DNA from: Pristiophorus japonicus
Lineage: Eukaryota
Direction of reading: 5' to 3'
DNA length: 64,000 bases
NCBI RefSeq assembly: GCF_044704955.1
Contig: NC_091995.1
Location: forward strand, 17,732,001 to 17,796,000
Part shown: positions 21,829-44,640 of the stretch, piece by piece
Numbering within the stretch: position 1 is the first letter of the stretch
Layout: every line of letters starts with the position of its first letter
Notes under the pieces: generated by a model
What the model saw: only the letters and a program-made list of their open reading frames with translations
What the model was told of the DNA's origin: nothing
Databases searched by the model: none
Made by a program: the position numbers and the translations under genes

Positions 21829-23849
21829 ACATCCTCTTAAATCTCCTCCATACCCTCACTAATGCAATCGCAGCTTTCCTGTAATGTGGTGACCAGAAGT
21901 GCAATCAGTACTATAGATGTGATCTAACTACTGTTTTATATAGTTTAAGCAGAACCTACCAGCTCTTATATTCTCTTCTGGCTAATAAAGGCAAGTACCT
22001 CGTATGTCTTCTTAACCACCTTATCTACCTGTCCTGCTACCTTCAGGGATGTGTTGACATGCACTCCAAGGTCCCTCTTTTCCTCTGCACTTCTCAGTGT
22101 CCCACCATTTAATGTGCATTCCCTTGCCTTGTTCGTCCTTCCCAAATGCATTACCTCACACTTCACTGGATTGATTACCATTTGCCACTTTTCTGCCCAC
22201 TTAAACAGTTCATTGATATACTGCTGCAGTCTAGTTTCTTCTTCATTATCAAGCACACAGCCAATTTTTGTATCATCTGCAAACTTCTTAATCATACTCC
22301 CTACATTCTCAAAACCAATGATATATACCACACAAAGCAAGGGATATAGTACTCAGCCTTGCGGAACCCCACTGTAAACAGCCTTCCAGTCACAAAAACA
22401 CCAATCGACCATTACCCTTTGCTTCCTATCTCTGAGACAATTATGGATACAACATGCAACTTTGCCTTGGATCCCATGGGCTTTTACATTCGTGACCAGT
22501 CTGCCATGTAGGACCTTATTCAAATCCTTGCTAAAATCCACATAAACTACATGAACTGCACTACCCTCATTGACCCTCCTTGTTACCTCCTCAAAAAAAT
22601 CAACCAAGTTAGTCAGAAACGACCTTCCCTTACCAAATCCATGCTGACTGCTCTTGATTAATCTGTGCCTTTCTAAATGAAGATTTATCCTGTCCTTCAG
22701 ACTTTTTTCTAATAATTTTCTCACCACCGAGGTTAGGCTGACTGGCCTGTAATTACACGGTCTATCTGTGTCTCCCTTTTGAAACAATGGTGTAACGTTA
22801 GCAATCCTCCAGTCCTCCGGCAGCACCTCTGTAGCCTAAGTGGATTGGAACATGATGGTTCTGCTCTTTCCTCCCTTTCTTCTCTTAATAGCCGTGAATA
22901 CATTTCATCTGGGACTGGGAATTTATCTTCTTTCAAAGATACTAATTCCCTTAATACTTCCTCTCTCACTGTGTTTATTTAATCTAATAGTTCACAATCC
23001 TGCTCCCTGATTGCAATGTCTGCATCGCCCTCACTTTTGTGAAAACAGACGTAAGAACCATACCCACGTCTTCTGCCTCCACACACATATTGCATTTATG
23101 GTCTCTAATAGGCCCGACTCTTTCTTTAGTTATCCTATTGCTCTAAATGTATTCAGAAATCATCTTTGCTTGAATTTACTTGCCAAATTATTTTTGTGCT
23201 CTCTCTTTGCTTTCCAATTTCCTTTTTCATTGCACCCTTGCCCTTTCTATACTTCTCTAGAGTTTCTGCAGTACTGAGCTCTCGTTATCTGTAATAAGCC
23301 TTCCTTTTTAAAAATCCTACCCGGTATGCCCCTTGACATCTAGGGAACTCTACCTTTGTTATTGCCCCATTTTTTTTAAAGAGAACATACTTGCTCTGAA
23401 CCGTCACGATCTCCTCCTTGATTGCCTCCCTGCTCTGACACCGATTTACCTTTAAGTGGCTGGTTACATTCAACGTTGGCTAAACCACATCTCAGCTTAG
23501 TAAAATTGGCTTTTCCCTAATTGAGAACTTTTCCCGCTGGTCGATGTTTGTCCTATTCCATAATTACCATATATCTTACTGAATTATGATCACTAGCACC
23601 AAAATGCTCTCCCACTGATAATCCTTGCACTAGCCCAGATTCATTCCCTAAAACTAAGTCAAGAATGGTCCGCTCCCTTGTTGGGCTTACTACATACTGG
23701 CTAAAAAATTTCTCCTGAATGCATTGTAGGAACTCTACACTCTCTATAAGCTTGACACTAATTCTACACCAGTTAATAATTTGATAGTTGAATTCCCCTA
23801 CTATTACTGTCTTATAGTTTATGCTCCACTCGAGACTCCTCTCGTCTTT

Positions 23850-24559: not shown

Positions 24560-25697
24560 CATGGGCTTTCGCGAAAGTAATACCCCAAGGTATTCAAGGA
24601 AATGTGGCAAGTTAAATCCATAATTAGTTCAGAGGCAGGAAGCAAAGTTTAATGGTCCGGGAGGTTTTTTTTAATGGAAGGCTTTTTCCAGTGGGGTTGC
24701 TCAGGGCTCAGTACAAGGTGCCTTGCTTTTTTGTGGTATATATCAATGACTTAGACTGGAATGTAGGGGCTTTGTTTAAGAAGTTTGGATATGATACAAA
24801 AATTGGCCATGTGGTTGGTAATGACGAAGAATGCTGTAGACTGCAGGAAGATATCAATGAACTGGTCAGGTGGGCAGACAGTGGCAAATGGAATTCAACT
24901 CAGAGAAGTGGGAGATATTGCATTCGTGGAGGGCTGAAAAGGCAAGGGAATACACAATAAATGGTACAATACTACGAAGTGTAGAGGAACAAAGGGACCT
25001 TAGTGTGCATGTCCACAGATCCCTGAAGGTAGCAGGAGAGGCAGATAAGATGGTAAGAAGGCATACAGAATACATGCCTTTATTAGCTGAGGCATAGAAT
25101 TCAAGAGCACGGATGTTATGCTTGCACTGTATAAAACACTACTTAGGCCACAGCGAGAGCAGTGCGTGCAGTTCCGGTCACCACATTACAGGAAAGATGT
25201 GATTGCACTAGAGCGGCTACAGAGGAGATTTATGAGGATGTTGCCTGGACTGGATAATTTCAACTATGATGAAATATTAGATAGGCTGCTGTTGTTTGCC
25301 TTGGAACAGAGGAGGCTCAGGGCTGACCTCATTCAGGTGTATGAAATTATGAGGGCCTGGATAGAGTGCATACGAAGGACCTGTTTCCCTTAGCTGAGAG
25401 GTTAGCATGCATGAGGCATAGATGTAAAGTAATTGGTAGCAGGTTTAGGGGAATTTGAGGGGAATGTTTTGCGCCTAGAGGGTTGTGGGATTCTGGAACT
25501 CACTGTTGAAAAGGTGATAGAGGCAGAAACTCTCACCACTGTGAAAAAGCTCTTAGATTTGCAATTGACATGCCGTTACCTACAAAGCTACGGACCAAGA
25601 GCTGGAAAATGGGACTAGGCTGGATAGATTTTTCTCCACCGGCACAGACACGGTGGCCCATTGCTCTCCTTCAATGCACTAAATTTCTATGATTCTA
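24560..25697 (+). mobile_element. CR1-like LINE (RT to tail) carrying an unoccupied Tx1 target site at ~25011-25023
   Basis: ORFs 24652..24960, 24870..25097 (DLSVHVHRSLKVAG) and 25118..25393; tttctatgattct tail. Confidence 0.85.
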
Positions 25698-27579: not shown

Positions 27580-28581
27580 TATAGAAACATAGAAATCTAC
27601 AGCGCAGAAGGAGGCCATTTCAGCCAATCCGCGCTGGTCGACAAAAAGCCACACGGCCCTCGATCAGTAGCGGTGAAGGTTACATATAAACCTATGAAAA
27701 ATGAACAATGGCAAAAATGTAAAGTGTATCCGGCCCAACCAGTTCACCCCACACAATTGTTCCACTCCTTGCACTGCAACATTCTACACTTCACACAACC
27801 GAAGCCATGCCATCTCCTGGGAGAGGAAGAAACAGCTAAAAACCTAGGCCAATTGGGGAAAATAAGCTTGGAAAAATTCCTCTCCGCCCCATCCTGGCGA
27901 TCGAAACTAGTTGACGAGATCACCCTGGCCGTATTCGATTCCCTGCAGTACTTACCATCGTATCTGCGCTAGCCAACAAGAGGTTATGCAGTCTAATCCC
28001 ACTTAGCAACTCTAGCTCCGTAACCCTGCAGGTTACGGCACATCAAGTGCCCAACCAAACACCTTTTAAATGTGGTGAGGGTTTCTGCATCCACCACCCT
28101 TCCAGGCATTGAGTTCCAAGCACCTATAACCCTGTGCGTGAAGAAGCTTCCCACAAATTCCCTCTGAACCTTCCACCAACCACAAAATTATCCCCCCTCA
28201 TAATTGACCCCTCCACCAAGGGAAATAGGCCCTTGCTATCTAATTTATCCAAGCCCCTCAAAATTTCAAACATTTCAACGAGGTCTCCTCTCAGCCTCCT
28301 CTGTTCCAATGAGAACAAACCCCACCTATCCAATATTTAATCATAGCTAAGATTCTCCATTCCAGGTAGCATCCTAATAAATCTCCTCTGCAGCCTTTCT
28401 CGTGCAGTCACGTCCTTCATATAATGAGGTGACCAGAACTGCATGCAGTACTCCAGGTGCAGCCTGACCACAGTATTATAAAAATTAAGCATAATCTCCC
28501 ATCTCTTGTATGCTATGCCTCCGTCAATAAAGGCAAGCATTCTTATCCACCTGGTTTGCTACTTTCAGGGATTCTGTGGAC
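27580..28581 (-). mobile_element. CR1/HER1-like LINE, 3' part of the element hosting the Tx1 pair
   Basis: ORF pieces LAFI..GI.YK....LNFYNTVVRLHLEYCMQFWSP and GLFSLEQRRLRGDL; tail near 27580. Colinear with 42951-44640 once the Tx1 pair is removed. Confidence 0.85.
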
Positions 28582-29543
28582 CAATGGTGGAGCTTTGGAG
28601 GCGTGGCCTATTCAGTTGGAGCTGTGCTGCTGTGAGAGAAGGAACTCCCTGCTTTGCTCCTGCCTGGAAGGCCTAGAGTGAACCCTGAGACCAGCCCAGG
28701 AAGAGGAGGAGGGGGCTGGCTTACTAAAATTCAACGTCCAGAGGGAGAGGAGGAGAGCAGAACATTTATCAACTACTTACTACTACAGAGAGTTGGAGAG
28801 AGGGGGAAAAGAACAACTTGAGAAAACACCATCCAGTGTGGAAGGAGGGAGAGCCATTTCTACAATTTTCGACAGGTGGGTGTGTTTTGGTGCATTCCCT
28901 GAAAGAATTTGTTGTATCAGTGGGGGGAGGAAAGAAGACCATTCGAGGGCCGAAACATCGTGGCGGGTGTGTGTGTGTGGAAGTGTGTGTGGGGGTCTTG
29001 CTTACTGCTAGGTCCCACACACCACTGAAGCACCCCTCCCCCATTGCCTAGCCTAGAATAGCTGAAGCTACCTGGCTCAAGTATTACTAATCACCCTATT
29101 TAACATCGTTGGGAGTGTGTGCCTGGGTGGCTCCAGCTACCCCAGGTAAAGACATCTTCTCCCCCCACCCGAAGACCATCGACAAGGACTGTGCCTTGAT
29201 TTTTTCCATCACCCTAGGAAAAACGCCCACCCATCGCTGTGAGGGGAGACCTGCCCTCGCAGCTTCCCTCTTTCCCACCCCCCCTCACTCTTTCTCACCC
29301 CACCTCTCTCTTTCTCTCTCTCTCTGTCTCTCCCCTCTCTCTCTGAGAGCCCTTTCCTCAAAATTTGGAAATAAGACAATTAAGACAACTGAGCAGAGGG
29401 AGCAAGGCCCCTCCCCATTCTTTAACTAGGGGAGAGGTGTGCCCCATTAAGAGATCCCTCTGTTCAAAACATCAACGAGGCCAATTAAAGACCATTAAGG
29501 CCTGTGACTTTGCGGTGAGTGTAGCCTTTAAAGGGACCCCGTG

Positions 29544-31621
29544 ATGGCGACCCCATCCAAGCCGGTGGCAGGGCCAGCTAAGACGTACGCGCAGGCGGCA
29601 TCCACATCCACGGCGCCTCCTGCTGCCCTGCCACCATTCAGACTCATAACAAAAAAACACGGGGTCAAGAGCTACACTCACCCCACAATGAGCATCGAGG
29701 AGTGCGTGCGGGCGATGGCTGGGATAGTCGGCCCCTCGGCCATTGTTGCGGCCTCCAAGATGTCTGGGAAGGCTGTATTCTTCCTGGGGTCGGAGCGGGC
29801 GGTGTCACTGGCCCTCGAAAAGGGGCTCACGGTAGGCGGGACGTTCCTGCCGGTGGACCCTCTCGAGGCCACCGCACAGAGGGTCATCCTTTCAAACGTC
29901 CCGTCCTTTGTTCCCGCTGAGCTCCTCCTCCCTCACCTACACCAACTGGGGGAGGTAAGGTTGGGTATCAACCCCATACCACTCGGCCTCAGGGAGAAAA
30001 GCCTGCGCCATGTGATCTCCTTCCGCCGCCAGCTCTTTGTCCGGCTGGCGCGGGAGGAGACGACGGAGGGCAATTTTAATGTGGTGCACGAGGGGACTGC
30101 CTACCGCGTCTTTTGGACGTCGGATGGTGTGCGGTGCCATGCCTACAGGGAGGTGGGGCACGTTCGCAAGAACTGCCCCCCCTCCAAGGCCACCAAACCA
30201 CCGAAGGCGGCCAAGGCTGGCACCGCCGCCACCCCTCCCCCTAGTAGCGTCCGCGTGCCGGGAGCCGTAGGTGCGCGGGCATCGTCGGGGGCCTTTGTTT
30301 TCACGGTCTCCGGCGGGGGGGAGGGAGAACGTCCGATCGGAAAGAAGGCGCAACATCTTGAGGCGGGTCACCTCAGTGCGCCAGAAAGTTTAACCACCGC
30401 GCTCAGCCCAACCCCGTCACCGGCGAGCGCGGGGCGCCCTGAGCCTGTGTCCGAGCCCTTGACCAATATCACAGAGGGGTTCGGGCGTGGGCAAGTTAAG
30501 AAAAAGGGGGGGGGGCGGAGCGGGAAGCCTCGGCAGACATGGAGGTCTCCCTGCCACCGTGCACCCCCAGGAACAAAAGGAGGCGCGCTCCAATGAGGCG
30601 GAGGGTGAGCAACATCCCTCCGCGGAGGAGTCGGTGCCCGCCGCATGTCCCGTGTCCCCCACCAGCGCCCCCAAACTGCGCCCTAGATGGGAGGAATCTG
30701 TCCCCGGGGAGGGAGGGGCAGTCGAGGCCGCCCAGCCTCTGCCTCCCGGGGATGGCGTGGAGGGTCTGCCTGTCATGGGGGGCGTGGGGCCAGCGGAGGA
30801 ACGCGTAGCCGCCGGGTCGAGCGTCCCGGGAACTGAGGCGGGCGGGGCCGAAAAGTCCGGACCTGAGCCCGCCCAGCCAATATCCAACTTCCCCCGGGAC
30901 ATGCTCGACTCGGCAGAAATACACAGTATTAACAATTTTAATGAATCTGTACACGCTGGGCCGGGGATTGGCGGTGGGGAGGGAGAAGAACACCAACCCT
31001 CACCCCCTACTTTGGAGCTGGGGTACTTGGAGGACCTGGAGAATTTCCTAAACCAGGTCTCTCCGAGCTCCCCGGTTCCTGGGGTGGAGGGGGAACCACT
31101 TCCGCTGTCTCTTCCTGACCCAGCACCGCTTTTAAAAGAGCCCAGTGGGGACTCCTCTGTCAACGATCCCGGGGGGTGGGATCGGGGCAGAGCCAGGGCC
31201 AGATGGAGCGGCCGGGCCATTTGCCGTACCTCGTGCGGTCGACGGGCCGGCTGCTGCCGGCGACCTCCTGGAGGGGGACGAGGACTCGGTGGGGGACTCG
31301 GGAGAAGATCTCGAGTCCATCGCCAGTGAGGCGGTGGATCTCCTCGTGCCCGCCGCTGAGTCCCCCCTCATTCCCGTCAAGGAGCTCCGCGACTTTTTAG
31401 CCCAGAGCCAGGGTCGCCGCAACTGAGCCCATCTGGCCCTGGAAAGATGGTCCGAGCCGGGGCTGCTCGTCGCGTCCATCCGCGCCGCCGCTAAAACCAT
31501 GGCCGCGGGTGAGCCCTTATCAAAGGCGCAAGGCCTTGAGCTGTGCCGGCTCAAAAGGTTCCTTGCTGGGCTGCTGAAGGAGTGGTGGTCAACAAACGAC
31601 TCCACTACCCCCCCACCATAG
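29544..31621 (+). pseudogene. Tx1 copy 1 ORF1 (gag-like zinc knuckle plus low-complexity acidic/Pro region), frameshifted
   Basis: MATPSKP...KKHGVKS...IVAASKMSGKAVFFL...VILSNVP...CHAYREVGHVRKNCP (knuckle intact as CHACREVGHVRKNC in copy 2). Frameshifts at G-runs near 30510 and 31175, stop near 31424. Confidence 0.85.
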
Positions 31622-31651
31622 GTTAGGTAGTGGCTGCACTATGCTTTTGTC

Positions 31652-34600
31652 ATGAAGATAACCATAGCCAGCCTCAACATCAACGGCGGCAGAGAGGCAC
31701 ACCGTAGATTTAACAATTTTTCGCTCCTGCGGGAGGGGAAATATCCGGTGTGCTTCCTGCAAGAAACCCACACCGTTCCGGGAGAAGAAGCCACGTGGCT
31801 CCTGGAATGGCAAGGAGATGTCCGCATGAGCCACCTCACTACCACTTCTTGTGGGGTGGCCATCTTGTTGGCCCCGCATTTTCAGCCAGAGATCTTGGGG
31901 GTCGAGGAGCCCGTGCCAGGCCGCTTGCTGCACGTCACAGTTTGCCTGGGGGACATGCAGCTCCATCTCGTGAGCGTATACGCCCCTCAGCCCGGCCCGC
32001 AGCAAACACGCTTCTTCGAAGAAGTGTCCGCTCTTCTTGGCTCTGTAGACGTCGGCGACTGCATTGTCCTCGGGGGGGATTTTAACTGCACCCTCGAGGC
32101 GAGGGACCGCTCCGGTGCCCCGCAGAGCATGACGGCGATGGAGAAGTTGAGGGACCTGGTCGGGTCCTTCGACTTGGTGGACGTCTGGCGAAATCTCCAT
32201 CCCGACTCCAGCGCCTTTACTTGGGTGAGGCCTGGAGTAGGATGGTCCAGAGTCGACCGCCTTTACGTGTCACGGGCGTACATTTCCTGCATCCCGGCGG
32301 CCTCCATGCGGCCGGTGCCATGTCCGGACCACCACCTGGTATGGGCGGAGCTCACTTCGCTCCGCCCGAGGACGGGGTCCACGTACTGGCATTTTAACAA
32401 CCAGCTGCTGGAGGACGTGCGGTTTCAGGACTCGTTCCGTCGTTTCTGGGCCGACTGGAGAAGGAAGCAAGGGGGCTTCCCCTCCTTGAGGCTATGGTGG
32501 GACGTGGGCAAGGCTCACGTCTGCGTCTTCTGTCAAGAGTACGCGAGGGGGTCGACCAAGATGCGGGCGGCCAGGGTCGGGCGCCTAGAAAAAGAGGTGC
32601 TCGAACTGGAGTCCCGTCTCGGTCAAGTCATCGAGGACCCGGCCCTGCGGACGGTGTATGAAGCGAAGAAGGCCGCGCTGAAGGACCTGCAGCTCGTCGG
32701 GTCCCGAGGCGCGTTCGTGAGGTCGCGGATCCAGTTCCTGCGGGATCTGGACCGCGGCTCTCCCATCTTCTACTCGCTGGAAAAAAGACAGAGTGTCCGT
32801 AAGCAGCTCTTGACGCTGCTGGCCGACGACGGCTCTCTCGTCTCGGATTCGGAGGGCATCAACAACAGGGCCCGTGAATATTACGGGGCCCTGTTCTCTC
32901 CGGAGCAGTCCATCGAGGTAGAGTTTTGTGTGAGGACCTGCCGAAGGTCGGCCCGGAGGGCACTGGAAATCTGGAAGCTCCGCTGAGCCTGGCGGAGCTG
33001 ACTGGCGCCCTCGCCCGGCTCTTGAGGGGAAAAGCCCCGGGGCTGGGCGGGCTGACCGTGGAGTTCCACAGGGCATTCTGGGATGTCCCGGGGAGCGACT
33101 ATGCGCGGGTCCTGGGGGAAAGTCTGGCGACCGGGGAGATGCCCCTCTCTTGTTGCAGGGCAGTCATCATCCTGCTGCCTAAGAAGGGCGATCTCCGCCT
33201 CCTTAAGAACTGGCGCCCGGTCTCCCTCCTCAGCATGGACTACAAAATCTTCGCCAGGGCGATGTCTGTTCGCCTTGGCGCCGTGCTGGACCACATTATC
33301 CACCACGACCAGTCCTACACAGTCCTGGACCGGACAATCCACGATAACATCCATCTGGTCCGGGACCTCATCCATCATTCCCAGGAGGCTGGTCTGTCGG
33401 TCGCCTTCCTATCTCTCGACCAAGAGAAGGCGTTCGACAGGGTGGATCACGACTATCTGTTCGGAACTCTGCACGCTTTCGGGTTCGGAACGCATTTTAT
33501 CGTCCGGATCCGACTTTTGTACGCCGCCGCGGAGTGTCTGTTAAAGGTTAACGGGTCCTTGACAGCGCCCCTTCGCTTTGGGAGAGGGGTGCGCCAGGGA
33601 TGCCCCATGTCCTGCCAGTTATATGCTATCTGCGTGGAGCCTTTCCTGCGCCTCCTGCAGACGAGGTTGACGGGACTGGCTCTGCAAGGGCCGGGCGTGG
33701 AGGTCGTCCTCTCGGCTTACGCCGATGACGTGCTCCTCACGATAGAGGATCCCGCTGACCTGCAGAGGATGCGTGAGTGCCAGGAGATTTACTTGGCCGC
33801 ATCCTCCGCCAGGATCAACTGGAAGAAATGTTACAGACTCCTGGTGGGTCAGTGGCGGGTGGACTCCCTGCCGGAGGAGCTCAGGCCTTTTGCCTGGAGC
33901 ACGACCCATCTCCTCTATCTGGGAGTCTACCTTAGCCCCGACGAGGAAGCCTGGCCGGCAAACTGGTAAGAGCTGGAGGCCAAGGTCGCCGCTCGCCTAG
34001 GGCGCTGGACAGGACTGCTCTGAGTGCTGTCCTACAGGGGTCGAGCACGAGTCATAAACCAGCTGCTGGCCGCCATGTTGTGGTACCGGCTGTTCACTTT
34101 GATCCCTCCCCCTGCGTTTGTCACCAAGATACAGAAGAAGCTGGTGGACTTCTTCTGGAACAACAGAAAGCACTGGGTCTCTGCCGCGGTCTTGAGTCTC
34201 GCGCTTGGGGAGGGCGGTCAGTCGTTGGTGTGCGTCAGCACCCAGCTCACGACTTTCCATCTTCAGACCCTGCAGAACCTTTACGTCGAGCCCCCTCCTA
34301 GGTGGCGTGCTCTGGCGACGTATTTCTTCAGCCTGCAGCACGGCCTGAACTACGACACGCAGCTCCTGTTTTTGAGCTTGGGGGGGCATCAGGACCACCT
34401 TCCAGGGGCTGCCTGTCTTTTACAAGGAACTCACCAGGGTCTGGAACAAAGTCTCCACCAAGCGCAGCTCTCCACCGGCTGGAGTGGCGGCTGTCCTGCA
34501 GGAGCCGCTGCTCGGGAATCCATACCTCCATGACCGAGGTTTTAGATGGCGGTCGGACGAGAGGGCTGTGGCTGGTGAGGTGACCAGGGTCAGGGACCTG

Positions 34601-35542
34601 CTCGATGGTGGAGGAGCGGGCTGGATGGCGCCAGACACGCTGGCGCGGCGCCTAAATTCCACCAATGTCCGCCGCGCGGCCGATGCCATCGAGTCGCTAA
34701 AAACAGCTCTGGGCCCTGACTCCGTTAGGTGCATCGAGGAGGCTCAAGCACGTGGGGAGATCCCGTCTGAACTTACCCCCGTCCGGATGGAATTCCTCAT
34801 CGGCGCCAAACCCCGGAACCTCCCTCGGGAGCCGGCGCCTCACAACTTGAGCCACCTCGAGGAAATCCCCTCCGTGCCTTTCAGTTCCGCGCGGAGGGGT
34901 TTCTTGTACTGGCTGCTCCTGCACACTCTCAACTTTGCCATCCTCGCCTGCCATCCGGACACGCCATGGCATACCATCTTGCCGTCCGGAGAAGTCGGGG
35001 GTCCCCGATGGAGGGCACTCTACCCGGGAGTCCTCCCAGTATTTATCGGGGACTTGGCCTGGAGGGTGGTGCACGGAGCAGTCCCGTGCAATAAATTTTT
35101 AAGCCGGTTCACGGGCTCCTAGGCCGCCTGCAATTTCTGCAGTCTGGAAGAGTCCGTGTTCCATGTTTTTATGGAATGCACGAGGTTGCAGCCCCTGTTT
35201 TATTATTTAAAGGGGCTGCTCCTGAAATTCTGGCTGCACTTCAGTCCCACACTCCTGATCTTTGGACACCCTGTGCGGAGGGGAGCGGGTAGGTCCGAGG
35301 GCCTCCACGTAGGACTGCTCCTGGGCACGGCCAAGGGTGCCATCAGCCGATCCAGGCAGCGGGCGGTCGAGAGGGTCGTTCAACCTGACTGCCTGCCTCT
35401 CTTCCGTGCGTACATCCGTGCCAGGGTGTCCTTGGAGTTGGAGCACGTGATGTCCACCGGTACGCTGGCGGCCTTCCGCGAGAGGTGGGCACCAGAGGGT
35501 CTGGAGTGCATCGTCACGCCCGGCAACCAAATTTTTATTTGA
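31652..35542 (+). pseudogene. Tx1 copy 1 ORF2 (APE endonuclease-RT-zinc finger), disrupted
   Basis: Motifs SLNING, FLQETH, GGDFN, RVDRLY, PDHH; RT motifs KNWRPVSLL, LDQEKAFDRV, GVRQGCPMS, AYADD, YLGV; then LSYRGR.LVINQL and CxxC...HVFMEC. Several frameshifts and stops. Confidence 0.93.
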
Positions 35543-36731
35543 TGTTATGTTTTAAAGTTTAATTTGTTTTAATTGCCGGTGTTTTTAGTGTCCCCTCCAC
35601 TTTTATAGGGTGCACTTGGAAAAAAAAAGATTTTAATGCCCCCAAAAAAACTTTAAAAAACCCCAAAAAAACAAAAACAAAAATAAAAGGGCCTTGGAAA
35701 TGTTTGGTGCGCCCCCCCAGATCGATTTTATGATTTAATGTTTTAATTTTCTCACAAAAAGAGTTCTGTGGACCAATGGTGGAGCTTTGGAGGCGTGGCC
35801 TATTCAGTTGGAGCTGTGCTGCTGTGAGAGAAGGAACTCCCGGCTTTGCTCCTGCCTGGAAGGCCTAGAGTGAACCCTGAGACCAGCGCAGGAAGAGGAG
35901 GAGGGGGCTGGCTTACTACAATTCAACGACCAGAGGGAGAGGAGGAGAGCAGAACATTTATCAACTACTTACTACTACAGAGAGTTGGAGAGAGGGGGAA
36001 AAGAACAACTTGAGAAAACACCATCCAGTGTGGAAGGAGGGAGAGCCATTTCTACAATCTTCGACAGATGGGTGTGTTTTGGTGCATTCCCCGAAAGACT
36101 TTGTTGTATCGGTGCGGGGAGGAAAGAAGACCATTCGAGGGCCGGAACATCGCGGCGGATGTGTGTGTGTGGAAGTGTGTGTGGGGGTCTTGCTTACAGC
36201 TAGGCCCCATACACCACTGAAGCACCCCTCCCCCATTGCCTAGCCTGGGATAGCTGGAGCTACCTGGCTGAAGATTTACTAATCACCCTATTAAACATCG
36301 TTGGGAGTGTGTGCCTGGGTGGCTCCAGCTGTCCCAGGTGAAGACATCTTCTCCTCCCACCCGAAGACCATCCCATAAGACTGTGCCTTGCTTTGTTTTC
36401 CATCATCTAGGGAGTGCGCCCCTGAAAAATACCCACCCATCGCTTTGAGGGGAGACCTGCCCTCACAGCTTCCCTCTTTCCCACCCCCCCCCTTTCTCTC
36501 TCGCTGTCACTTTCTCTGTCTCTCCCCTCTCTCTGAGAGCTCCTTTCCTCCTTAATTGGAAAAGCAATTAAGACAATTCAGCAGAGGGAGCAAGGCCCCT
36601 CCCCAATTGTCAACTAAGGGAGAGGTGTACCTCATTGAGAGCTCCTCTGCTCATAAATTCAAACGAGGCCAATTTAAGAACATTAAGGCCTGTGACTCTG
36701 GGGTGGGTGTACCCCTTAAAGGGACCCCGTG

Positions 36732-38827
36732 ATGGCGACTCCATCCACGCCGCTGGCAGGGCCAGCTAAGACTTATGCGCAGGCGGTGTCTGCATCCACG
36801 GCTCCTCCTGCGTCAACTGCTGCCCTGCCACCGTTCAGACTAATTGCTAAGAAAAACGGGGTCAAGAGCTACACTCACCCCACAATGAGCATCAAGGAGT
36901 GCGTGCGGGCGATGGCTGGGGTAGTCGGCTCCTCGGCCATTGTCGCAGCCTCCAAGTTGTCTGGGAAGGCTGTATTCTTCTTGGGGTTGGAGCGGGCGGT
37001 GACCCTGGCCCTTGAAAAGGGGCTCACGGTGGGCTGAACGTTCCTGCCGGTGGACCCTCTCGAGGCCACCGCGCAGAGGGTCATCCTTTCAAACGTCCCG
37101 CCCTTTGTTCCCGCTGAGCTCCTCCTCCCTCACCTACACCAACTGGGGGAGGTAAGGTCAGGGATCAACCCCATACCGCTCGGCCTCAGTGAGAGCAGCC
37201 TGCGCCATGTGTTCACCATCCGCCGCCAGCTCTTTGTCCGGCTGGCGTGGGAGGAGACAACAGAGGGATCATTTAATCTGGTGCACGAGGGGACTGCCTA
37301 CCGCATCTTCTGGACGTCGGACGGCGTGCGGTGCCATGCCTGTAGGGAGGTGGGGCACGTTCGCAAGAACTGCCCCGCCTCCAAGGCTGCCAAACCACCG
37401 AAGGTGGCCAAGGCTGCGCCGCTGCCACCCCTCCCCCTAGTAGCGTCCGTGTGCCGGGAGCCGTAGGTGCGCGGGCATCGTCAGGGGCCTTTGTTTTCAC
37501 GGCCTCTGGCGGTGGGGAGGGAGAGCGTCCGATCGGAAAGAAGGCGCGGAGGAAGGCAAAACATCTCGAGGCGGGTCCCCTCAGTGCGCCAGAAAGTTTG
37601 ACCACCGCGCTCAGCCCAACCCAGTCATCGGCGAGCGTGGGGTGCCCTGAGCCCGTGCCCAAGCCCTTGATCAATACGGCAGAGGGGCTCGGGCGCGGGC
37701 CAGATAAGATAACGGGGGAGGCGGAGCGGGAGGCCTCGGCAGACATGGAGGTCTCCCTGCATCCACGCCCCCCCAGGAACAAAAGGAGGCGCCACTCCAA
37801 TGAGACGGAGGGGGAATAACATCCCTCCGCGGAGGAGTCGGTGCCTGCTGCGTGTCCCGCGTCCCCCACCAGTGCCCCCAAACTGCGCCCTAGATGGGAG
37901 GAATCTGTGCCCGTGGAGGGAGGGGCAGTCGAGGCTGCCCAGCCTCTGCCTCCCGGGGATGGCGTGGGGGATCTGCCTGTCATGTGGGGCGTGGAGCCAG
38001 CGGAGGAATACGATGCTGCCGGGTCGAGCGTCCCGGGGACTGAGGCGGGCTGGGCCGAAAAGGCCGAACCTGAGCCCGCCCAGAAAATATCCAACCTCCC
38101 CCGGCACTTGCTCGACTCAGCAGAAATACACAGTATTAACAATTTTAATGAATCTGTACACGCTGGGCCGGGGGGTGGCGGCGGGGAGGGAAAGAACACC
38201 AAACTTCGCCCCCTACTTTGGAGCTGGGGTACTTGGAGGACCTGGAGAATTTCCTAAACCTATTCTCTCCGAGTTCCCTGGTTCATGGGGCGGAGTAGGA
38301 ACCCCTTCCGCTGTCAATTCCTGATCCAGCACCGCTTTTAAAAGAGCCCAGTGGGGACTCCTCTGTCGATGATCCTGGGGGTGGGATCGGGGCAGAGCCA
38401 GGGCCAGATGGAGCGGTCGGGCCGTTTGCCATACCTCGTCTGGTTGACGGGCCGGCTGCTGGCGGCGACCTCCCGGAAGGTGACGGGGACTCGGTTGGGG
38501 ACTCGGGAGAAGATCTCGAGTCCATCGCCAGTGAGGCAGTGGATCTCCTCGTGCCCGCCGCTGAGTCCCCCCCTCATTCCTGTAGAGGAGCTCCGGGACT
38601 TTTTGGCCCAGAGCCAGGGTCGCCGCAACCGAGCACATCTGGCCGTGGAAAGATGGTCCGAGCCAGGGCTGCTCATCGCGTCCGTCCACGCCGCCGCTAA
38701 AACTATGGCCGTGGGTGGGCCCTTATCAAAGGCGCAAGGCCTTGAGCTGCGCCGGCTCAATAGGTTTCTCGCTGGGCTGCTGAAGGAGTGGAGGTCAACA
38801 AACGACTCCACTCTCCCCCCACAATAG
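36732..38827 (+). pseudogene. Tx1 copy 2 ORF1, disrupted
   Basis: ORF-track pieces 36729..37037, 37050..37466 (CHACREVGHVRKNCP), 37451..37819, 37841..38257 and 38351..38827. Confidence 0.85.
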
Positions 38828-38857
38828 GTTAGGTAGAGGTTGCACTATGCTTTTGTC

Positions 38858-41800
38858 ATGAAGATTACCATAGCCAGCCTCAACATCAACGGCGGCAGAG
38901 AGGCACACCGTAGATTTAACAATTTTTCACTCCTGCGGGAGGGGAAATATCCGGTGTGCTTCCTGCAAGAAACCCACACCGTTCCGGGAGACGAACCCAC
39001 GTGGCTCCTGGGATGGCAAGGAGATGTCCGCATGAGCCACCTCACTATCACTTCTTGTGGGGTGGCCATCTTGTTGGCCCCGCATTTTCAGCCGGAGATC
39101 TTGGGGGTCGAGGAGCCCGTGCCAGGCCGCTTGCTGCACGTCACAGTTCGCCTGGGGGACGTGCTGCTCCATCTCGTGAGCGTGTACGCCCCTCAGCCCG
39201 GACCGCAGCAAACGCGCTTCTTCGAAGAAGTGTCCGCTCTTCTTGGCTCCGTCAACGTCGGCGACTGCATTGTCCTCGGGGGGGATTTTAACTGCACCCT
39301 CAAGGCGAGGGACCGCTCCGGTGCCCCGCAGAGCATGACGGCGATGGAGAAGTTGAGGGACCTGGTCGGGTCCTTCGACTTGGTGGACGTCTGGCGAAAT
39401 CTCCATCCCGACTCCAGCGCCTTTACTTGGGTGAGGCCTGGAGTAGGATGGTCCAGAGTCGACCGCCATTACGTGTCTCGGGCATACGTTTCCTGCATTC
39501 CGGCGGCCTCCATGTGGCCGGTGCCGTGTTCGGACCACCACCTGGTGGGGCGGAGCTCGCTTCGCTCCGTGCGAGGACGGGGTCCACGTACTGGCATTTT
39601 AACAACCAGCTGCTGGAGGACGTGCGGTTCCAGGACTCGTTCCGTCGATTCTGGGCCGACTGGAGAAGGAAGCAGGGAGACTTCCCCTCATTGAGGCTAT
39701 GGTGGGACGTGGGCAAGGCTTCTGTCAAGAGTACGCGAGGGGGTCGACCAAGAGGTGGGCGGCCGGGGTCGGGCGCCTAGAAAAATAGGTGCTCGACCTG
39801 GAGTCCTGTCTCGGTCAAGTCGTCGAGGACCCGGCCCTGCGGATGGTGTACGAAGCGAAGAAGGCCGCGCTGAAGGACCTGCAGCTCGTCAGGTCCCGAG
39901 GCGCATTCGTGAGGTCGCGGATCCGGTTCCTGCAGGATCTGGACCACGGCTCCCCCTTCTTCTACTCGCTGGAAAAAGGACAGAGTGTCCGTAAGCAGCT
40001 CTTGACGCTGCTGGCCGACGACGGGACATATATTACGGGGCTCTGTTCTCTCCGGAGCCGTCCAGCGAGGAAGCGCGTAGAGTTTTGTGGGAGGACCTGC
40101 TGAAGGTCGGCCCGGAGGGCGCCGAAAATCTGGAAGCTCCGCTAAGCCTGGCGGAGCTGACCGGCGCCCTCGCCCGGCTCTCGAGCGGAAAAGCCCCGGG
40201 GCTGGACGGGCTGACCGTGCAGTTCCACAAGGTGTCCTGGGATGTGCTGGGGGGCGACTACGCGTGGGTCCTGGGGGAAAGTCTGGCGACTGGGGAGATG
40301 CCCCTCTCTTGGCGCAGGGCAGTCATCGGCCTGCTGCCTAAGAAAGGCGGTCTCCGCCTCCTTAAGAACTGGCGCCCGGTCTCCCTCCTCAGCACGGACT
40401 ACAAAATCTTCGCCAGGGCAATGTCTGCTCGCATTGGCGCCATGCTGGACCACATGATCCTCCACGACCAGTCCTACACGGTCCCGGGCCAGACAATCCA
40501 CGATAACATCCATCTGGTCCGGAACCTCATCCATCATTCCCAGGAGGCTGGTCTGTCGGTCGCCTTCCTATCACCCGACCAAGAGAAGGCGTTCGACAGG
40601 GTGGATCACGACTATCTGTTCGGAACTCTGCGCGCTTTTGGGTTTGGGACACATTTCGTTGCCCAGATCCGACTTTTGTACGCCGCCGCAGAGTGTCTGA
40701 TCAAGCTTAACGGGTCCTTGACGGCGTCCCTTCGCTTTGGGAGAGGGATGCGCCAGGGATGCCCCATGTCCGGCCAGTTATATGCCATCTGCGTGGAGCC
40801 TTTCCTGCGCCTCCTGCAGACGAGATTGATGGGACTGGCTCTGCAAGGGCCGGGCGTGGAGGTCGTCCTCTTGGCTTACGCCGATGACGTGCTCCTCGCG
40901 GTAGAGGATCCCGCTGACCTGCGGAGGATGCTTGAGTGCCAGGAGATTTACTCGGCCGCATCCTCTGCCAGGATCAACTGGGAGAAATGTTCCGGACTCC
41001 TGGTGGGTCAGTGGCGGGTGGACTCCGTGCCGGAGGAGCTCAGGCCTTTTACCTGGAGCACGACCCATCTCCTCTATCTGGGAGTCTACCTTAGCCCCAA
41101 CGAGGAAGCCTGGCCAGCGAACTGGCAAGAGCTGAAGGCCAAGGTCGCCGCTCGCCTAGGGCGCTGGACAGGACTGCTCTGAGTGCTGTCCTACAGGGGT
41201 CGAGCGCTAGTCATAAACCAGCTGGTGGCCGCCATGTTGTGGTACCGGCTGTTCACTTTGACCCCTCCCCCTGCGTTTGTCACCAAGATACAGAAGAAGC
41301 TGGTGGACTTCTTCTGGAACAATAGGAAGCATTGGGTCTCTGCCGTGGTCTTGAGTCTCCCGATTGGGGAGGGCGGTCAGTCGTTGATGTGCATCAGCAC
41401 CCAGCTCACGACTTTCCGTCTTCAGACCCTGCAGTGATACCTTTATGTCGAGCCGCCTCCTAGGTGGCATGCTCTGGCGACGTATTTCTTCCGCCAGCAG
41501 CACGGCCTCAAGTATGACACGCAGCTCCTGTTTGTGAGCTTGGGGGGCGTCAGGACCGCCTTCCAGGAGATGCCTGTCTTTTACATGGAACTCACCAGGG
41601 TCTGGAACAAAGTCTCCACCAAGCGCAGCTCTCCACCGGCTGGAGTGGCGGCTGTCCTGCAGGAGCTGCTGCTCGGGAATCCGTACCTCCACGACCGAGG
41701 TTTTAGGTGGCGGTCGGACGAGAGGGCTGCGGCTGGTGAGGTGACCAGGGTCAGGGACCTGCTCGATGGCGGAGGAGCGGGCTGGATGGCGCCAGACATG

Positions 41801-42703
41801 CTGGCGCAGTGCTTAACTTCCGCCAATGTCCGCCGCGTGGCCGATGCCATCGAGTCACTAAAAATAGCTCTGGGCTCTGACTCCGTTAGGTGCATCGTTG
41901 AGGCTCAAGCACGTGGGGAAATCCCGTCCGAACTGACCTCCGTTCGGTCGTAATTTCTCATCGGCGCCAAACCCTGGAACCTCCCTCGGGAGCCGGCGCC
42001 TCACAACTTGAGCCGCCTCGAGGAAATCCCCTCCGTGCCTTTCAGTTCCGCACGGAGGGGTTTCCTGTACGGGCTGCTCCTGCACACTCTCAACTTTGCC
42101 ATCCTCGCCTGCCGTCCGGACACGCCATGGCGTATCATCTTGCTGTCCGGAGGAGGCGGGGGTCCCCGATGGAGGGCACTCTACGCAGGAGTCCTCCCAC
42201 TATTCATCGGGGACTTGGCCTGGAGGGTGGTGCACGGAGCAGTGCCGTGCAATAAATTTTTAAGCCGGTTCACGGGCCCCCAGGCCGCCTGAAATTTCTG
42301 CCATCTGGAAGAATCCATGTTCCATGTTTTTATTGAATGCACGAGGTTGCAGCCCCTGTTTTATTATTTAAAGGTGCTGCTCCTGAAATTCTGGCTGCAC
42401 TTCAGTCCCACACTCCTGATCTTTGGGCACCCTGTGAGGAGGGGAGCGGGTAGGTCCGAGGGCCTCCTCGTAGGACTGCTCCTGGGCACGGCCAAGGGTG
42501 CCATCAGCCGGTCCAGGCAGCGGGCGGTCGAGGGGGTCGTTCAACCTGACTGCCTGCCTCTCTTCCACGCGTACATCCATGCCAGGATGTCCTTGGAGAT
42601 GGAGCACGCGGTGTCCACCGGTACGCTCGCGGCCTGCCGCGAGAGGTGTGCACCAGAGGGACTGGATTGCATCATCACGCCCGGCAATCAAATTTTAAAT
42701 TGA
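38858..42703 (+). pseudogene. Tx1 copy 2 ORF2 (EN-RT-ZnF), disrupted
   Basis: Starts MKITIASLNING; RT piece 40085..41182 with AYADD; C-terminal piece 42317..42703. Multiple stops and frameshifts. Confidence 0.93.
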
Positions 42704-42950
42704 TTTTATGTTTTAAAGTTTAATTTGTTTTAATTGCCGGTGTTTTAGTATCCCCCTCCCCTTTTATAGGGGGCACTTGGAGGAAAAAAAATATATGATT
42801 TTAGTGCCCAAAAAAACTTTAAAAAAAACAAAAACACAAAAAAAATTTCAAAACAAATACACAAAAAAAGGGCCTTGTAAATGTATGGTGTGCCCCTCAG
42901 ATCAGGGGACACGATTTAAGAATTAATGTTTTAGTTTCCTCCCAAAAGAG

Positions 42951-44640
42951 TTCTGTGGACAAGCACTCCAAGATCCCTTTTTTTACCGACACTTCTTAGT
43001 GGCCTACCATTTAATGTGTATACCCTTTCCTTATTAGCTCTCCCCAAATACATTGCCTCAAACTTCTGCGAACACAATTCCATTTGTCACTGTTCTTCCC
43101 ACATGACCAGTACATTGATATCCTCTTGCAGTCCATGGCATTCCTCTTCATTATCAACCACACAACCAATTTTAGAGTCCTTTGAAAACTTCTTAATCAT
43201 GATCCTTATATTCAAATCTATCATTGTTGTATACCAAAAAAGCAAGAGAACCAAGACTGAGCCCTGCAGAGCCCCACTGGAAGTCACAAAATTATCCATG
43301 AAACATTACACTTTGCTTCTTACCTCTAAGCCAATTTTAGATCCAACTTGCCACATTTCTGTGGATCCCATGGGCTTTAACCTTCTTGACCAATTTACCT
43401 TGTGGGACCTTATTAAAAGCTTTGCTAAAGTCCAGATACACTACATCATATGCACTATCCTCGTCGAGTCTCCAGGTTACCTCCTCAAAAAATTCAATCA
43501 GGTTAGCCAAGCACCATCTAACCTTTATATATACGTGTTGACTGTCCCTCATAAAACCTGGTATTTTAAATGTAGTTTTATGCTGTCGTTCAGGCTTTTT
43601 TCCAATAATGTTCCCACCACTGAGGTTAGTCTGACAGGCCTGTAATTACTCGTCCTATCCCCTTTTCTCTTCTTAAACAAGGGTACCATGTTAGCAGCCC
43701 GCCAGTCCTCTGGCATCAAACCCAAATACAAAACGGACTGGAAAATAATGGTCAACGCCTCTGCTCTTTCCTGTTTTGCCTCGTTCCTAGGATGCATTTC
43801 ATCCAGGCCTGGGGACTTATCTACTTTCAAAGTTGCTAAATCCATTTGTATCTCCTCTCTCACTATGTTTATTTCAGCCAGAATTTCACACTCCTCCTCG
43901 ATAGCAGTATCGGCATTGCCCCTTTCCTTTGTGAAAACAGATGCAAAGTATTAATTAAGAACCATACCAACTTCATCTGCCTCAATACAAAGATTACCCT
44001 CATGGTCTCTAATAGGCCCTACTCTTACTTTAGTTATCCCCTTGCTCTTAATACATTTATAGAACATCTTTGTTCCCCTTAATTTTACTGACCGAGAATT
44101 TTTCATGCTCTCTGAGCATTCCTCACATCCTTTCTAATTTTAGCTCTGAACTTTCTATATTCTGCCAAATAGAGTTTTTAGTCGTCGGTGTATGACATAA
44201 GCTTACCTTTTTTTCTTTACCCTCCCCTGTAAGTCTCTGGACATCCAGGGGACGCTAGAATTGTTATTCCCACCCTTTTTTCTTTAAGGAAAAATGTTTG
44301 GCCTGAGCCCTCCGGATCTCCTCCTTGAATGCCTCCCACTCTTCCAACACTGATTTCCATACAAGTAGCTGTTTCCAGTCCAATGCGCCAAATCACTTCT
44401 CAACTTAGCAAAATTAGCTTTTCCCCAATTTGGGACTTTTATTCCTGGTCTATAATCTTCCTTATCCATTATTACTTGAATCTGACTGAATTATAGTTGC
44501 TGGCAACTAAGTGCTCTCCAGCTGATTCTCCTTCTACCTGTCCAGCTTCATCCCCCCAAACAAAATCTAAAACCGCCCCCTCTTGTGTTGGACTTCTTAA
44601 GTACTGAGTAAAAATGTTCCCTTGAATGCATTTTAAGAAT
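42951..44640 (-). mobile_element. CR1/HER1-like LINE, 5' continuation of the Tx1 host element
   Basis: Motifs DKSPGLDEMHPR, NYRPVRLTSVVG, YLDFSKAFNKVP, FSKDSKIG; resumes exactly after the TSD. Confidence 0.85.

What the first reader, a model, noticed from the sequence alone, without database searches (positions are those of the whole stretch)
28572..42960. Two full-length Tx1 retrotransposons stacked at one nucleotide inside a CR1 LINE: candidate LINE-targeting, sequence-specific retrotransposon
Seen: the structure is TSD-element-TSD-element-TSD, with the identical 10-mer TTCTGTGGAC at 28572, 35764 and 42951. Removing the pair restores a colinear minus-strand CR1 (ctactttcaggga-ttctgtggac-aagcactccaagatccc), matching uninterrupted CR1 copies in this window at ~22035-22075 and ~24995-25035. 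The site is antisense to the conserved RT peptide DLGVHVHRSLKV. Established: Tx1-clade APE endonucleases are often sequence-specific (Xenopus Tx1L/Tx2L insert into Tx1D/Tx2D DNA transposons; Keno, Mutsu, Dewa, Kibi and Koshi target U2 snRNA, 5S rDNA, tRNA arrays and microsatellites), and specific elements form tandem arrays because the TSD regenerates the target. Inference: this family uses an abundant shark CR1 subfamily as a safe-harbour target, destroying its RT frame, i.e. a retrotransposon parasitising another retrotransposon. I do not know of a described CR1-targeting Tx1, but cannot search to confirm novelty.
Basis: partly seen in the sequence, partly recalled or inferred. Interest (0 to 1): 0.88.

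Follow-up and report, generated by a model that had tools for sequence, protein, structure and literature searches.

The report
LINE that lands in one CR1 site
Two copies of an L1/Tx1-type jumping gene inserted separately at exactly the same ten letters inside another jumping gene (CR1), so this family aims at a fixed site; this gives a known habit of Tx1-type elements a new kind of target.

Summary
TTCTGTGGAC occurs only three times in the window, at 28572, 35764 and 42951. It brackets two 7.2-kb elements, e1 (28582-35763) and e2 (35774-42950), which begin and end at the same letters. Removing both restores a colinear CR1-like LINE on the minus strand.

The cut site lies antisense to the codons for VHR in the reverse-transcriptase motif DLGVHVHRSLKV. 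Two other CR1 copies in the window carry the site unoccupied.

The main new result is that e1 and e2 are not local duplicates.
- In the true reading frames their differences give pN/pS 0.51 (Fisher p 3e-10). In both control frames the ratio is 1.05-1.06.
- ORF1 has diverged more than ORF2.
- Of 20 copy-private letters checked against the family's contigs, only one is shared, and it sits at a CpG.
- The copies carry alternative common family alleles at three non-CpG sites.

So two related but distinct source elements inserted independently at one nucleotide, which requires target specificity.

The elements have L1-like APE and RT domains and an ORF1 with a CCHC knuckle. This fits the Tx1 clade, but I could not run a reference phylogeny.

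The scan has noted this same pattern on at least ten other pieces of this genome, and two follow-ups reached the same verdict. This is a new target for a known habit.

The parts
27955..28571 (-). Host CR1-like LINE, 3'-ward part: the region after the RT domain to about the 3' end. The CR1 sense strand is the minus strand.
   Evidence: Similarity to other CR1-like copies in the window starts here. Minus-strand translation gives LEYCMQFWSPHY...LFSLEQRRLRGDL.
28572..28581 (+). Target-site duplication, copy 1 (TTCTGTGGAC).
   Evidence: The sequence is CR1-derived, because unoccupied CR1 copies hold it once.
28582..35763 (+). Element e1, full length, 7182 bp. 5' UTR 28582-29543. ORF1 from the ATG at 29544 to about 31329 (one frameshift; CCHC knuckle spoiled by C>Y). 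ORF2 31652 to about 35542 (APE, RT, C-terminal CX2C..H..C; several frame breaks). 3' UTR 35543-35763, A-rich, ending ...AAAAAGAG with no terminal poly(A).
35764..35773 (+). Target-site duplication, copy 2, between the two elements.
35774..42950 (+). Element e2, full length, 7177 bp, with the same ends as e1. It is more fragmented. Its ORF1 CCHC knuckle is intact at 37332.
   Evidence: zf-CCHC E 7e-4, 19.9 bits, just under the 20.8 cut-off.
42951..42960 (+). Target-site duplication, copy 3.
42961..44639 (-). Host CR1-like LINE, 5'-ward part (RT domain). It reads ...YLDFSKAFNKVP... and ...KKRDLGVL up to the junction.
   Evidence: The colinear match to the copy at 21827-23732 runs up to query position 4260, which is window 44639.
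22044..22064 (+). Unoccupied copy of the target site in another CR1-like element (CR1 sense on the minus strand); 2 mismatches.
   Evidence: RVT_1 ends about 10 residues before DLGVHV.
25005..25025 (-). Unoccupied copy of the target site in a third CR1-like element, with an exact match to CAGGGATCTGTGGACATGCAC.

Best explanation
A family of L1-group, Tx1-like LINEs (APE endonuclease, reverse transcriptase, ORF1 with a CCHC knuckle) integrates sequence-specifically at one site of a CR1-like LINE, in antisense orientation. The site codes for VHR(S) in the RT-terminal motif DLGVHVHRSLKV.

Shown here: two related but distinct source elements each inserted a full-length copy at the same nucleotide, each with the same 10-bp target duplication.

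Inferred from the junctions and from the established target-primed reverse transcription model:
- The endonuclease nicks the bottom strand at 5'-GTCCACAGAA^TCCC-3'.
- That 3'-OH primes reverse transcription at the RNA's ...AAAAGAG end. Annealing may be helped by a read-through tail that carries the donor's own downstream target copy.
- The top strand is cut 10 bp further on.

Because the duplication rebuilds half of the site next to each junction, a second element can enter beside the first. This gives TSD-element-TSD-element-TSD.
For: 1. Same nucleotide, same TSD, same termini, and an empty-site match in other CR1 copies.

2. Independent origin of e1 and e2:
- pN/pS between them is 0.51 over all ORF pieces in frame (Fisher p 3.2e-10). 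It is 1.05 and 1.06 in the two control frames.
- The ORF1 N-terminal piece gives 0.39 and the APE piece 0.26, each with p about 1e-5 to 1e-4.
- Non-CpG divergence is uneven: ORF1 5.6% against ORF2 3.6%, and the 5' UTR end plus ORF1 start 11-13%.
- Codon positions in the ORF1 piece are 31/20/46.

3. Comparison with about 42,000 family contigs of the same organism:
- At 12 of 14 places where e1 departs from a near-fixed family letter, e2 has the family letter.
- The same holds for 6 of 6 in the reverse direction.
- The one shared departure is at a CpG.
- The copies carry alternative common alleles at the non-CpG sites 35044, 35083 and 35173.

4. ORF2 is colinear with human L1 ORF2p: APE E 3e-27, RT E 5e-34.

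5. Tx1-clade elements are known to aim at repeats (PMC4494074).

Leads only: at least ten other first-reader notes and two follow-ups on other pieces of this genome describe the same site.
Against: - Only two copies could be examined directly. The share of all genomic copies that sit in this site was not measured here.
- CpG decay is about equal in the two copies (87 against 72, p 0.27). Their ages do not differ, which a duplication would also predict.
- The three TSD copies are identical.
- The nick positions and the read-through annealing step are inferred, not observed.
- The Tx1-versus-L1 clade assignment lacks an RT tree with named references.
- One unoccupied CR1 copy has a perfect site (25005-25025), so occupancy is far from complete. 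That is expected, but it is uninformative.
Confidence: 0.85

Rival explanations
1. One insertion was followed by a local tandem duplication, through unequal exchange or slippage between the two 10-bp TSD copies. The 8% divergence is then decay since the duplication.
For: - The structure TSD-e-TSD-e-TSD is what such an exchange would give.
- The two copies are of similar age by CpG decay.
- They agree at 14 of 19 sites that are polymorphic in the family.
Against: - Post-duplication decay is neutral, yet differences in the real frames show pN/pS 0.51 (p 3e-10) while control frames give about 1.05.
- ORF1 has diverged more than ORF2, and the 5' UTR end most of all.
- Almost no private lesions are shared, and three non-CpG common alleles differ.
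- 10 bp is very short for homologous exchange.
- According to the scan's unchecked notes, the pattern recurs at many loci.
Confidence: 0.06
2. The insertions are independent, but the specificity comes mainly from the RNA and not from the endonuclease. Read-through transcripts that carry the donor's downstream target would anneal to a nick or break in CR1 DNA (homing by homology). The APE itself would be only weakly selective.
For: - The element's own 3' end (...AAAAGAG) has no complementarity to the primer strand, whereas a read-through tail (TSD plus CR1) would pair perfectly. This is read from the sequence.
- Co-transcribed target sequence is known to sharpen the integration of other site-specific LINEs, as cited in PMC4494074.
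Against: - Exact and identical junctions and a fixed 10-bp stagger point to defined nicks on both strands.
- Tx1L and R1Bm endonucleases have their own sequence-specific target sites (described in PMC1950540).
- No transcript data are available here.
Confidence: 0.07
3. Assembly artefact or coincidence: the tandem is a mis-assembly, or two untargeted insertions met by chance.
For: No evidence specifically supports this. Repeats are in general prone to mis-assembly.
Against: - The copies differ at 545 aligned positions and by 26 indels, so they are not one copy assembled twice.
- Two untargeted hits on one nucleotide of a vertebrate genome are vanishingly improbable.
- The 10-mer is found three times against 0.11 expected.
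Confidence: 0.01

Closest known systems
Tx1L / Tx2L of Xenopus laevis (Tx1 clade), which insert into the DNA transposons Tx1D / Tx2D
   Same: - An APE-type LINE of the L1 group.
- Aims at one site inside another mobile element.
- Precise ends and a target duplication.
- An ORF1 of the RRM/CCHC kind rather than Transposase_22 (PMC4494074; PMC5203782).
   Different: The target here is the RT-coding part of a non-LTR retrotransposon (CR1-like), hit in antisense, not a piggyBac-type DNA transposon. The kinship of this family to Tx1L was not tested by a tree.
Crocodilian Tx1 families of Kojima 2015: Tx1-Mar (Mariner-N4_AMi), Tx1-9_AMi (Harbinger), and Tx1-8_Crp / Tx1-4_AMi (LTR retrotransposons)
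   Same: Tx1-type LINEs whose preferred target is a specific family of interspersed repeats. This shows that the clade changes targets freely among transposons (PMC4494074).
   Different: None of those targets is a LINE. No CR1 or other non-LTR target turned up in the papers searched. Repbase and Dfam entries could not be consulted.
Keno, Mutsu, Dewa, Kibi and Koshi (Tx1 clade of fishes), and R1/R2 of rDNA
   Same: Site-specific integration into a multicopy, conserved sequence, regarded as a low-cost niche. Stacking or tandem occupation of target arrays.
   Different: Their targets are host RNA genes or microsatellites, kept constant by host selection. Here the target is kept constant only by the CR1 element's own need for its RT motif.
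Human L1 ORF2p (PDB 8sxt, 8uw3, 8c8j; L1-EN 1vyb)
   Same: The closest solved proteins. APE and RT are colinear over residues 8-421 and 438-776.
   Different: L1 nicks loosely at TTTT/A, needs a poly(A) tail and has a Transposase_22 ORF1. This element has no terminal poly(A), has a CCHC ORF1, and uses a fixed target. Its beta-hairpin loop (TWVRPGVGWS) aligns slightly better with the grafted Tx1L loop of 2v0r than with the L1 loop. The difference is 2 bits, which is a weak hint.

Membership tests
Site-specific non-LTR retrotransposon | Independent insertions at the same nucleotide of the same target sequence | tested here: met
   Same site and same TSD. Independence is shown by pN/pS 0.51 in frame against about 1.05 out of frame, by unshared private lesions, and by differing common alleles.
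Site-specific non-LTR retrotransposon | A large share of all genomic copies flanked by the same sequence (Kojima 2015 criterion: more than 20% of flanks) | not testable with these tools
The Logan contigs of about 130 bp, together with the skipped A-rich stretch, did not bridge junctions. The scan's notes on other windows are leads only.
Site-specific non-LTR retrotransposon | Constant termini and a constant target duplication | tested here: met
   Both copies start CAATGGTGGAGC and end ...AAAAGAG. The TSD is 10 bp and identical three times.
L1 group (L1 + Tx1 clades) | ORF2 with an N-terminal APE endonuclease, then RT, then a C-terminal Cys/His motif, closest to L1-type ORF2 proteins | tested here: met
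   Pfam Exo_endo_phos E 1e-10 and RVT_1 E 2.5e-38. Best solved relatives are human L1 ORF2p at E 3e-27 and 5e-34, ahead of R2 at 1e-21. CX2C..H..C motif at 35129.
Tx1 clade | RT phylogeny (RTclass1-type) places the element with Tx1 rather than L1 proper | not testable with these tools
   No named Tx1 reference sequences were at hand. Atlas cluster names, the library of representatives and cluster names gave no clade labels.
Tx1 clade | ORF1 of the RRM/zf-CCHC kind (Type I variant) rather than Transposase_22 (PMC5203782) | tested here: inconclusive
   e2 has CHACREVGHVRKNC. Pfam zf-CCHC scores E 7e-4 at 19.9 bits, under the 20.8 cut-off. There is no Transposase_22 hit. The RRM was not demonstrated.
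CR1 clade (the target element) | RT phylogeny and a CR1-type 3' end (hairpin plus short 8-bp repeats) | not tested
   Only motif-level evidence: RVT_1 hits on better-preserved copies, and YLDFSKAF, DLGVHV and LEYC..WSP...RRLRGDL blocks. From memory these recall CR1 ORF2. 'CR1-like' is therefore a working label.

The most novel reading that the evidence does not exclude
The family is a hyperparasite of an active LINE lineage. It recognises, on the antisense strand, the DNA that encodes a reverse-transcriptase motif which CR1 cannot change without losing function. Every new CR1 copy would then create a new landing pad, and CR1 could not escape by mutation.

The association would be old. The element's 3' part is 94% identical in a second species, and its nearest protein relatives, at 60% identity, are in sea turtles, which are also rich in CR1.

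Its endonuclease would be a natural nickase with a recognition site of roughly 10-16 bp.
Probability: 0.3. Interest if true: 0.7.

Novelty: new member of a known kind. Interest (0 to 1): 0.5.

Why it matters
Target-specific LINEs are the natural models for RNA-templated, site-directed DNA insertion. Each new specificity adds a natural endonuclease/target pair that can be compared with Tx1L, R1 and R2.

A LINE whose niche is the coding sequence of another LINE would be a case of a transposon living inside another transposon. The target would be conserved by the other transposon's own selection and not by the host's.

For annotation of this genome, it explains recurrent 7-kb head-to-tail arrays inside CR1 copies. 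It also warns against reading them as segmental duplications.

Tried and rejected
Neither other copies nor the turtle relatives' loci could be fetched, so the target of the 60%-identical turtle elements stays unknown.
- **Read laying** on the middle junction. The family is very abundant, but the contigs are about 130 bp and the A-rich stretch 35638-35693 was skipped. No junction-bridging pieces or informative loose ends were listed. Only the table of other letters was usable.
- **Protein scan of metagenome contigs** found nothing. I ran no further search on a junction pattern, because chance hits would have swamped a short pattern.
- **Protein search**. The genome's own proteins are not in the collection.
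- **Clade names** were sought through the Atlas, the library of representatives and cluster names. None was informative.
- **CpG-polarity relative-age test**. 87 against 72 is not significant, so it does not separate the models.
- **Simple codon-position counts in ORF2** are uniform. The signal appears only when synonymous and non-synonymous sites are counted.
- **Multiple-of-three indels as evidence.** I rejected this because most of them lie in the 5' UTR.
- **Whole-element heterogeneity chi-square** (p 2e-18). It is inflated by low-complexity misalignment. After optimal realignment the excess is moderate. The ORF1-versus-ORF2 contrast, about p 7e-4, was worked out by hand from the counts.
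- **Handling of broken frames.** ORF pieces were searched apart, because read-through of stops by reference is not accepted. 
Full report
**1. The observation**

TTCTGTGGAC occurs three times in the window, at 28572, 35764 and 42951, and nowhere else on either strand. Shuffles expect 0.11.

The three junctions read:
- CAGGGA-TSD-CAATGGTGG at the left end;
- AAAAAGAG-TSD-CAATGGTGG in the middle;
- AAAAGAG-TSD-AAGCACTCC at the right end.

The two intervening stretches are e1 (28582-35763, 7182 bp) and e2 (35774-42950, 7177 bp). They align over their whole length at 91-92% identity, and the family has no other copy in the window.

Joining the two outer flanks inside a script gives a sequence that aligns straight across the junction with two other repeats of the window, at 21827-23732 and 25626-24573. 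Those copies hold the site once and unoccupied, at 22044-22064 (2 mismatches) and 25005-25025 (exact match to CAGGGATCTGTGGACATGCAC). The 10-mer is therefore target DNA that was duplicated, not part of the element.

The host copy differs slightly from the other two. It has one extra T, and AAGCAC where they have ATGCAC.

**2. What the elements are**

Each copy has four parts:
- a 5' UTR of about 960 bp;
- ORF1, starting at the ATG at 29544 in e1;
- ORF2, from 31652 to about 35542;
- an A-rich 3' UTR of about 220 bp that ends ...AAAAGAG without a terminal poly(A).

ORF2 pieces hit Pfam Exo_endo_phos (E 1e-10) and RVT_1 (E 2.5e-38). Among solved structures they are colinear with human L1 ORF2p, with the APE at E 3e-27 and the RT at E 5e-34, ahead of R2. 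A CX2C..H..C motif follows at 35129.

ORF1 has no Transposase_22 hit. It carries a CCHC knuckle that is intact in e2 (CHACREVGHVRKNC at 37332; zf-CCHC E 7e-4, just under the cut-off) and spoiled by C>Y in e1. Ivancevic et al. 2016 (PMC5203782) describe RRM/zf-CCHC ORF1 variants in non-mammalian animals as consistent with the Tx1 clade.

The endonuclease's beta-hairpin loop aligns marginally better with the Tx1L loop grafted into 2v0r than with the L1 loop. This is only a hint.

I could not place the RT in a tree with named references. Cluster and Atlas names were uninformative. I therefore call the family L1-group, Tx1-like. Both copies are dead, with several frame breaks each.

**3. What the target is**

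The host repeat is read on the minus strand. It gives RT blocks (YLDFSKAFNKVP) and, up to the junction, KKRDLGVL|VHRI. Beyond it come LEYCMQFWSPHY and LFSLEQRRLRGDL.

In a better-preserved copy (ORF 21966-22340, minus strand), Pfam RVT_1 ends about ten residues before RDLGVHVNTSLKV. The site thus lies at the last conserved block of the RT, and the Tx1-like elements sit antisense to it.

From memory, these blocks are those of CR1 ORF2. I did not test CR1-clade membership by tree or by 3'-end structure, so 'CR1-like' is a working label.

**4. Duplication or two insertions?**

This question decides whether the finding means anything, and it is where I can add evidence. A single insertion followed by unequal exchange between the TSDs would give the same picture. 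Four tests bear on it.

(a) *Selection signature.* A copy that is duplicated in place decays neutrally, so differences between duplicates should give pN/pS near 1. Between e1 and e2, summed over the seven ORF pieces in their real frames:
- pS is 0.111 and pN is 0.057, a ratio of 0.51 (Fisher p 3.2e-10);
- the same columns read in the two wrong frames give 1.05 and 1.06 (p 0.7);
- the ORF1 N-terminal piece gives 0.39 (p 2e-5) and the endonuclease 0.26 (p 7e-5), again with control frames near or above 1.

Much of the divergence, which I estimate at roughly half of the synonymous divergence, therefore arose in lineages whose proteins were under purifying selection. That means before each copy was inserted.

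(b) *Uneven divergence.* This lead came from the scan's note s1-874920, and I tested it here.
- Non-CpG divergence is 5.6% in ORF1 against 3.6% in ORF2. By hand from the counts, this gives about p 7e-4.
- It is 11-13% in 29345-29760 (the end of the 5' UTR and the start of ORF1) after optimal realignment.
- It is 4.5% in the first 580 bp.
- The ORF1 piece shows a codon-position pattern of 31/20/46 (p 0.005).

(c) *Private lesions.* The one reads call laid about 42,000 contigs of the same organism on 35014-36523.
- At 14 places nearly all family contigs differ from e1. At 12 of these e2 has the family letter, at one it has a third letter, and at one (a CpG) it shares e1's letter.
- Seven places are listed where e2 departs from the family. 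Six have a counterpart in e1, and at all six e1 has the family letter.
- There is thus no shared post-insertion history.

(d) *Common alleles.* At 19 places the family is split 15-85%. The two copies carry opposite alleles at five of them. Three of the five are non-CpG (35044, 35083, 35173), and two of those are transversions. Under duplication I expect about 0.3 such coincidences, which gives p of about 0.004 by my own Poisson estimate.

One test did not discriminate. CpG decay is similar in both copies (87 against 72, p 0.27), so the two insertions are of similar age.

Taken together, e1 and e2 come from two related but distinct source elements. Two independent hits on one nucleotide cannot be chance, so the family is target-specific.

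**5. Mechanism**

Shown:
- the same site, the same stagger and the same termini, twice;
- the TSD lies between the elements, which excludes a template switch from one RNA to another during a single integration.

Inferred from the junctions and the established target-primed reverse transcription model:
- The first nick is on the bottom strand at 5'-GTCCACAGAA^TCCC-3'.
- The second nick is on the top strand 10 bp further on, after GGAC.
- The element's own 3' end has no complementarity to the primer, but a read-through transcript from a donor sitting in the same site would carry UUCUGUGGAC plus CR1 sequence and would pair with it perfectly. This kind of help is reported for other site-specific LINEs (discussed in PMC4494074).
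- After one insertion, each junction keeps the TSD plus one original flank. Stacking therefore shows that one half-site plus the TSD is enough for recognition. Which half, and hence which copy came second, cannot be told here.

**6. Comparison with what is known, and novelty**

Kojima 2015 (PMC4494074) lists these Tx1-clade targets:
- the piggyBac-type Tx1D;
- Mariner-N4_AMi;
- Harbinger transposons;
- particular LTR retrotransposons;
- U2, U5 and 5S genes;
- satellites and microsatellites.

The paper sets a working criterion of more than 20% of flanks sharing the same sequence.

Five full-text searches turned up no Tx1 family aimed at CR1 or at any other non-LTR element. Repbase Reports and Dfam could not be consulted, so an existing database entry cannot be excluded. 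I rate this as a new member of a known kind, meaning a new target class for a known habit.

This scan has already noted the same pattern on at least ten other pieces of this genome. Two follow-up agents (s1-874699 and s1-874695) reached the same reading. I treat those notes as leads, not evidence.

**7. Limits**

- The contigs did not bridge the junctions.
- The claim that the element harms CR1 is not supported by anything seen here.

Noticed in passing
window 35014-35625 against 35779-36523: In the contigs of organism A, the ORF2 C-terminal part of the element draws 10-50 times more summed contig depth than the 5' UTR. This fits heavy 5' truncation or a short non-autonomous partner that shares this part. 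No such short copy lies in this window.
   Followed up: partly
window 35014-35595: A second species (organism B, runs X5 and X6) holds contigs about 94% identical to the element's 3' coding part (36 differences in 582 letters). The family is therefore not confined to one species.
   Followed up: no
window 32926-33969 (RT piece): The nearest proteins in the public collection are 'unnamed protein products' of sea turtles (Natator, Caretta, Lepidochelys) at about 60% identity, well ahead of teleost hits at about 47%. Whether those turtle elements also sit in CR1 could not be checked.
   Followed up: partly
window 42931-43083, minus strand: A 50-aa ORF reads from the CR1 RT frame (…KKRDLGVL) through the TSD (VHR) into the antisense 3' end of e2 (TLLGGN, then a stop). 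The chimeric frame ends six codons past the TSD.
   Followed up: yes
window 28582-29160 and 35774-36352: The first 580 bp of the two copies differ by only 4.5%, against 7.7% overall. This could reflect a conserved promoter region in the sources, a low CpG content, or local gene conversion between the tandem copies.
   Followed up: partly
window 35770 (run X2): Three contigs join GGACCAATGG... to a different upstream sequence (TTTCATGCACAA) instead of the TSD. This may be a diverged subfamily with another 5' junction, or a 5' extension.
   Followed up: no
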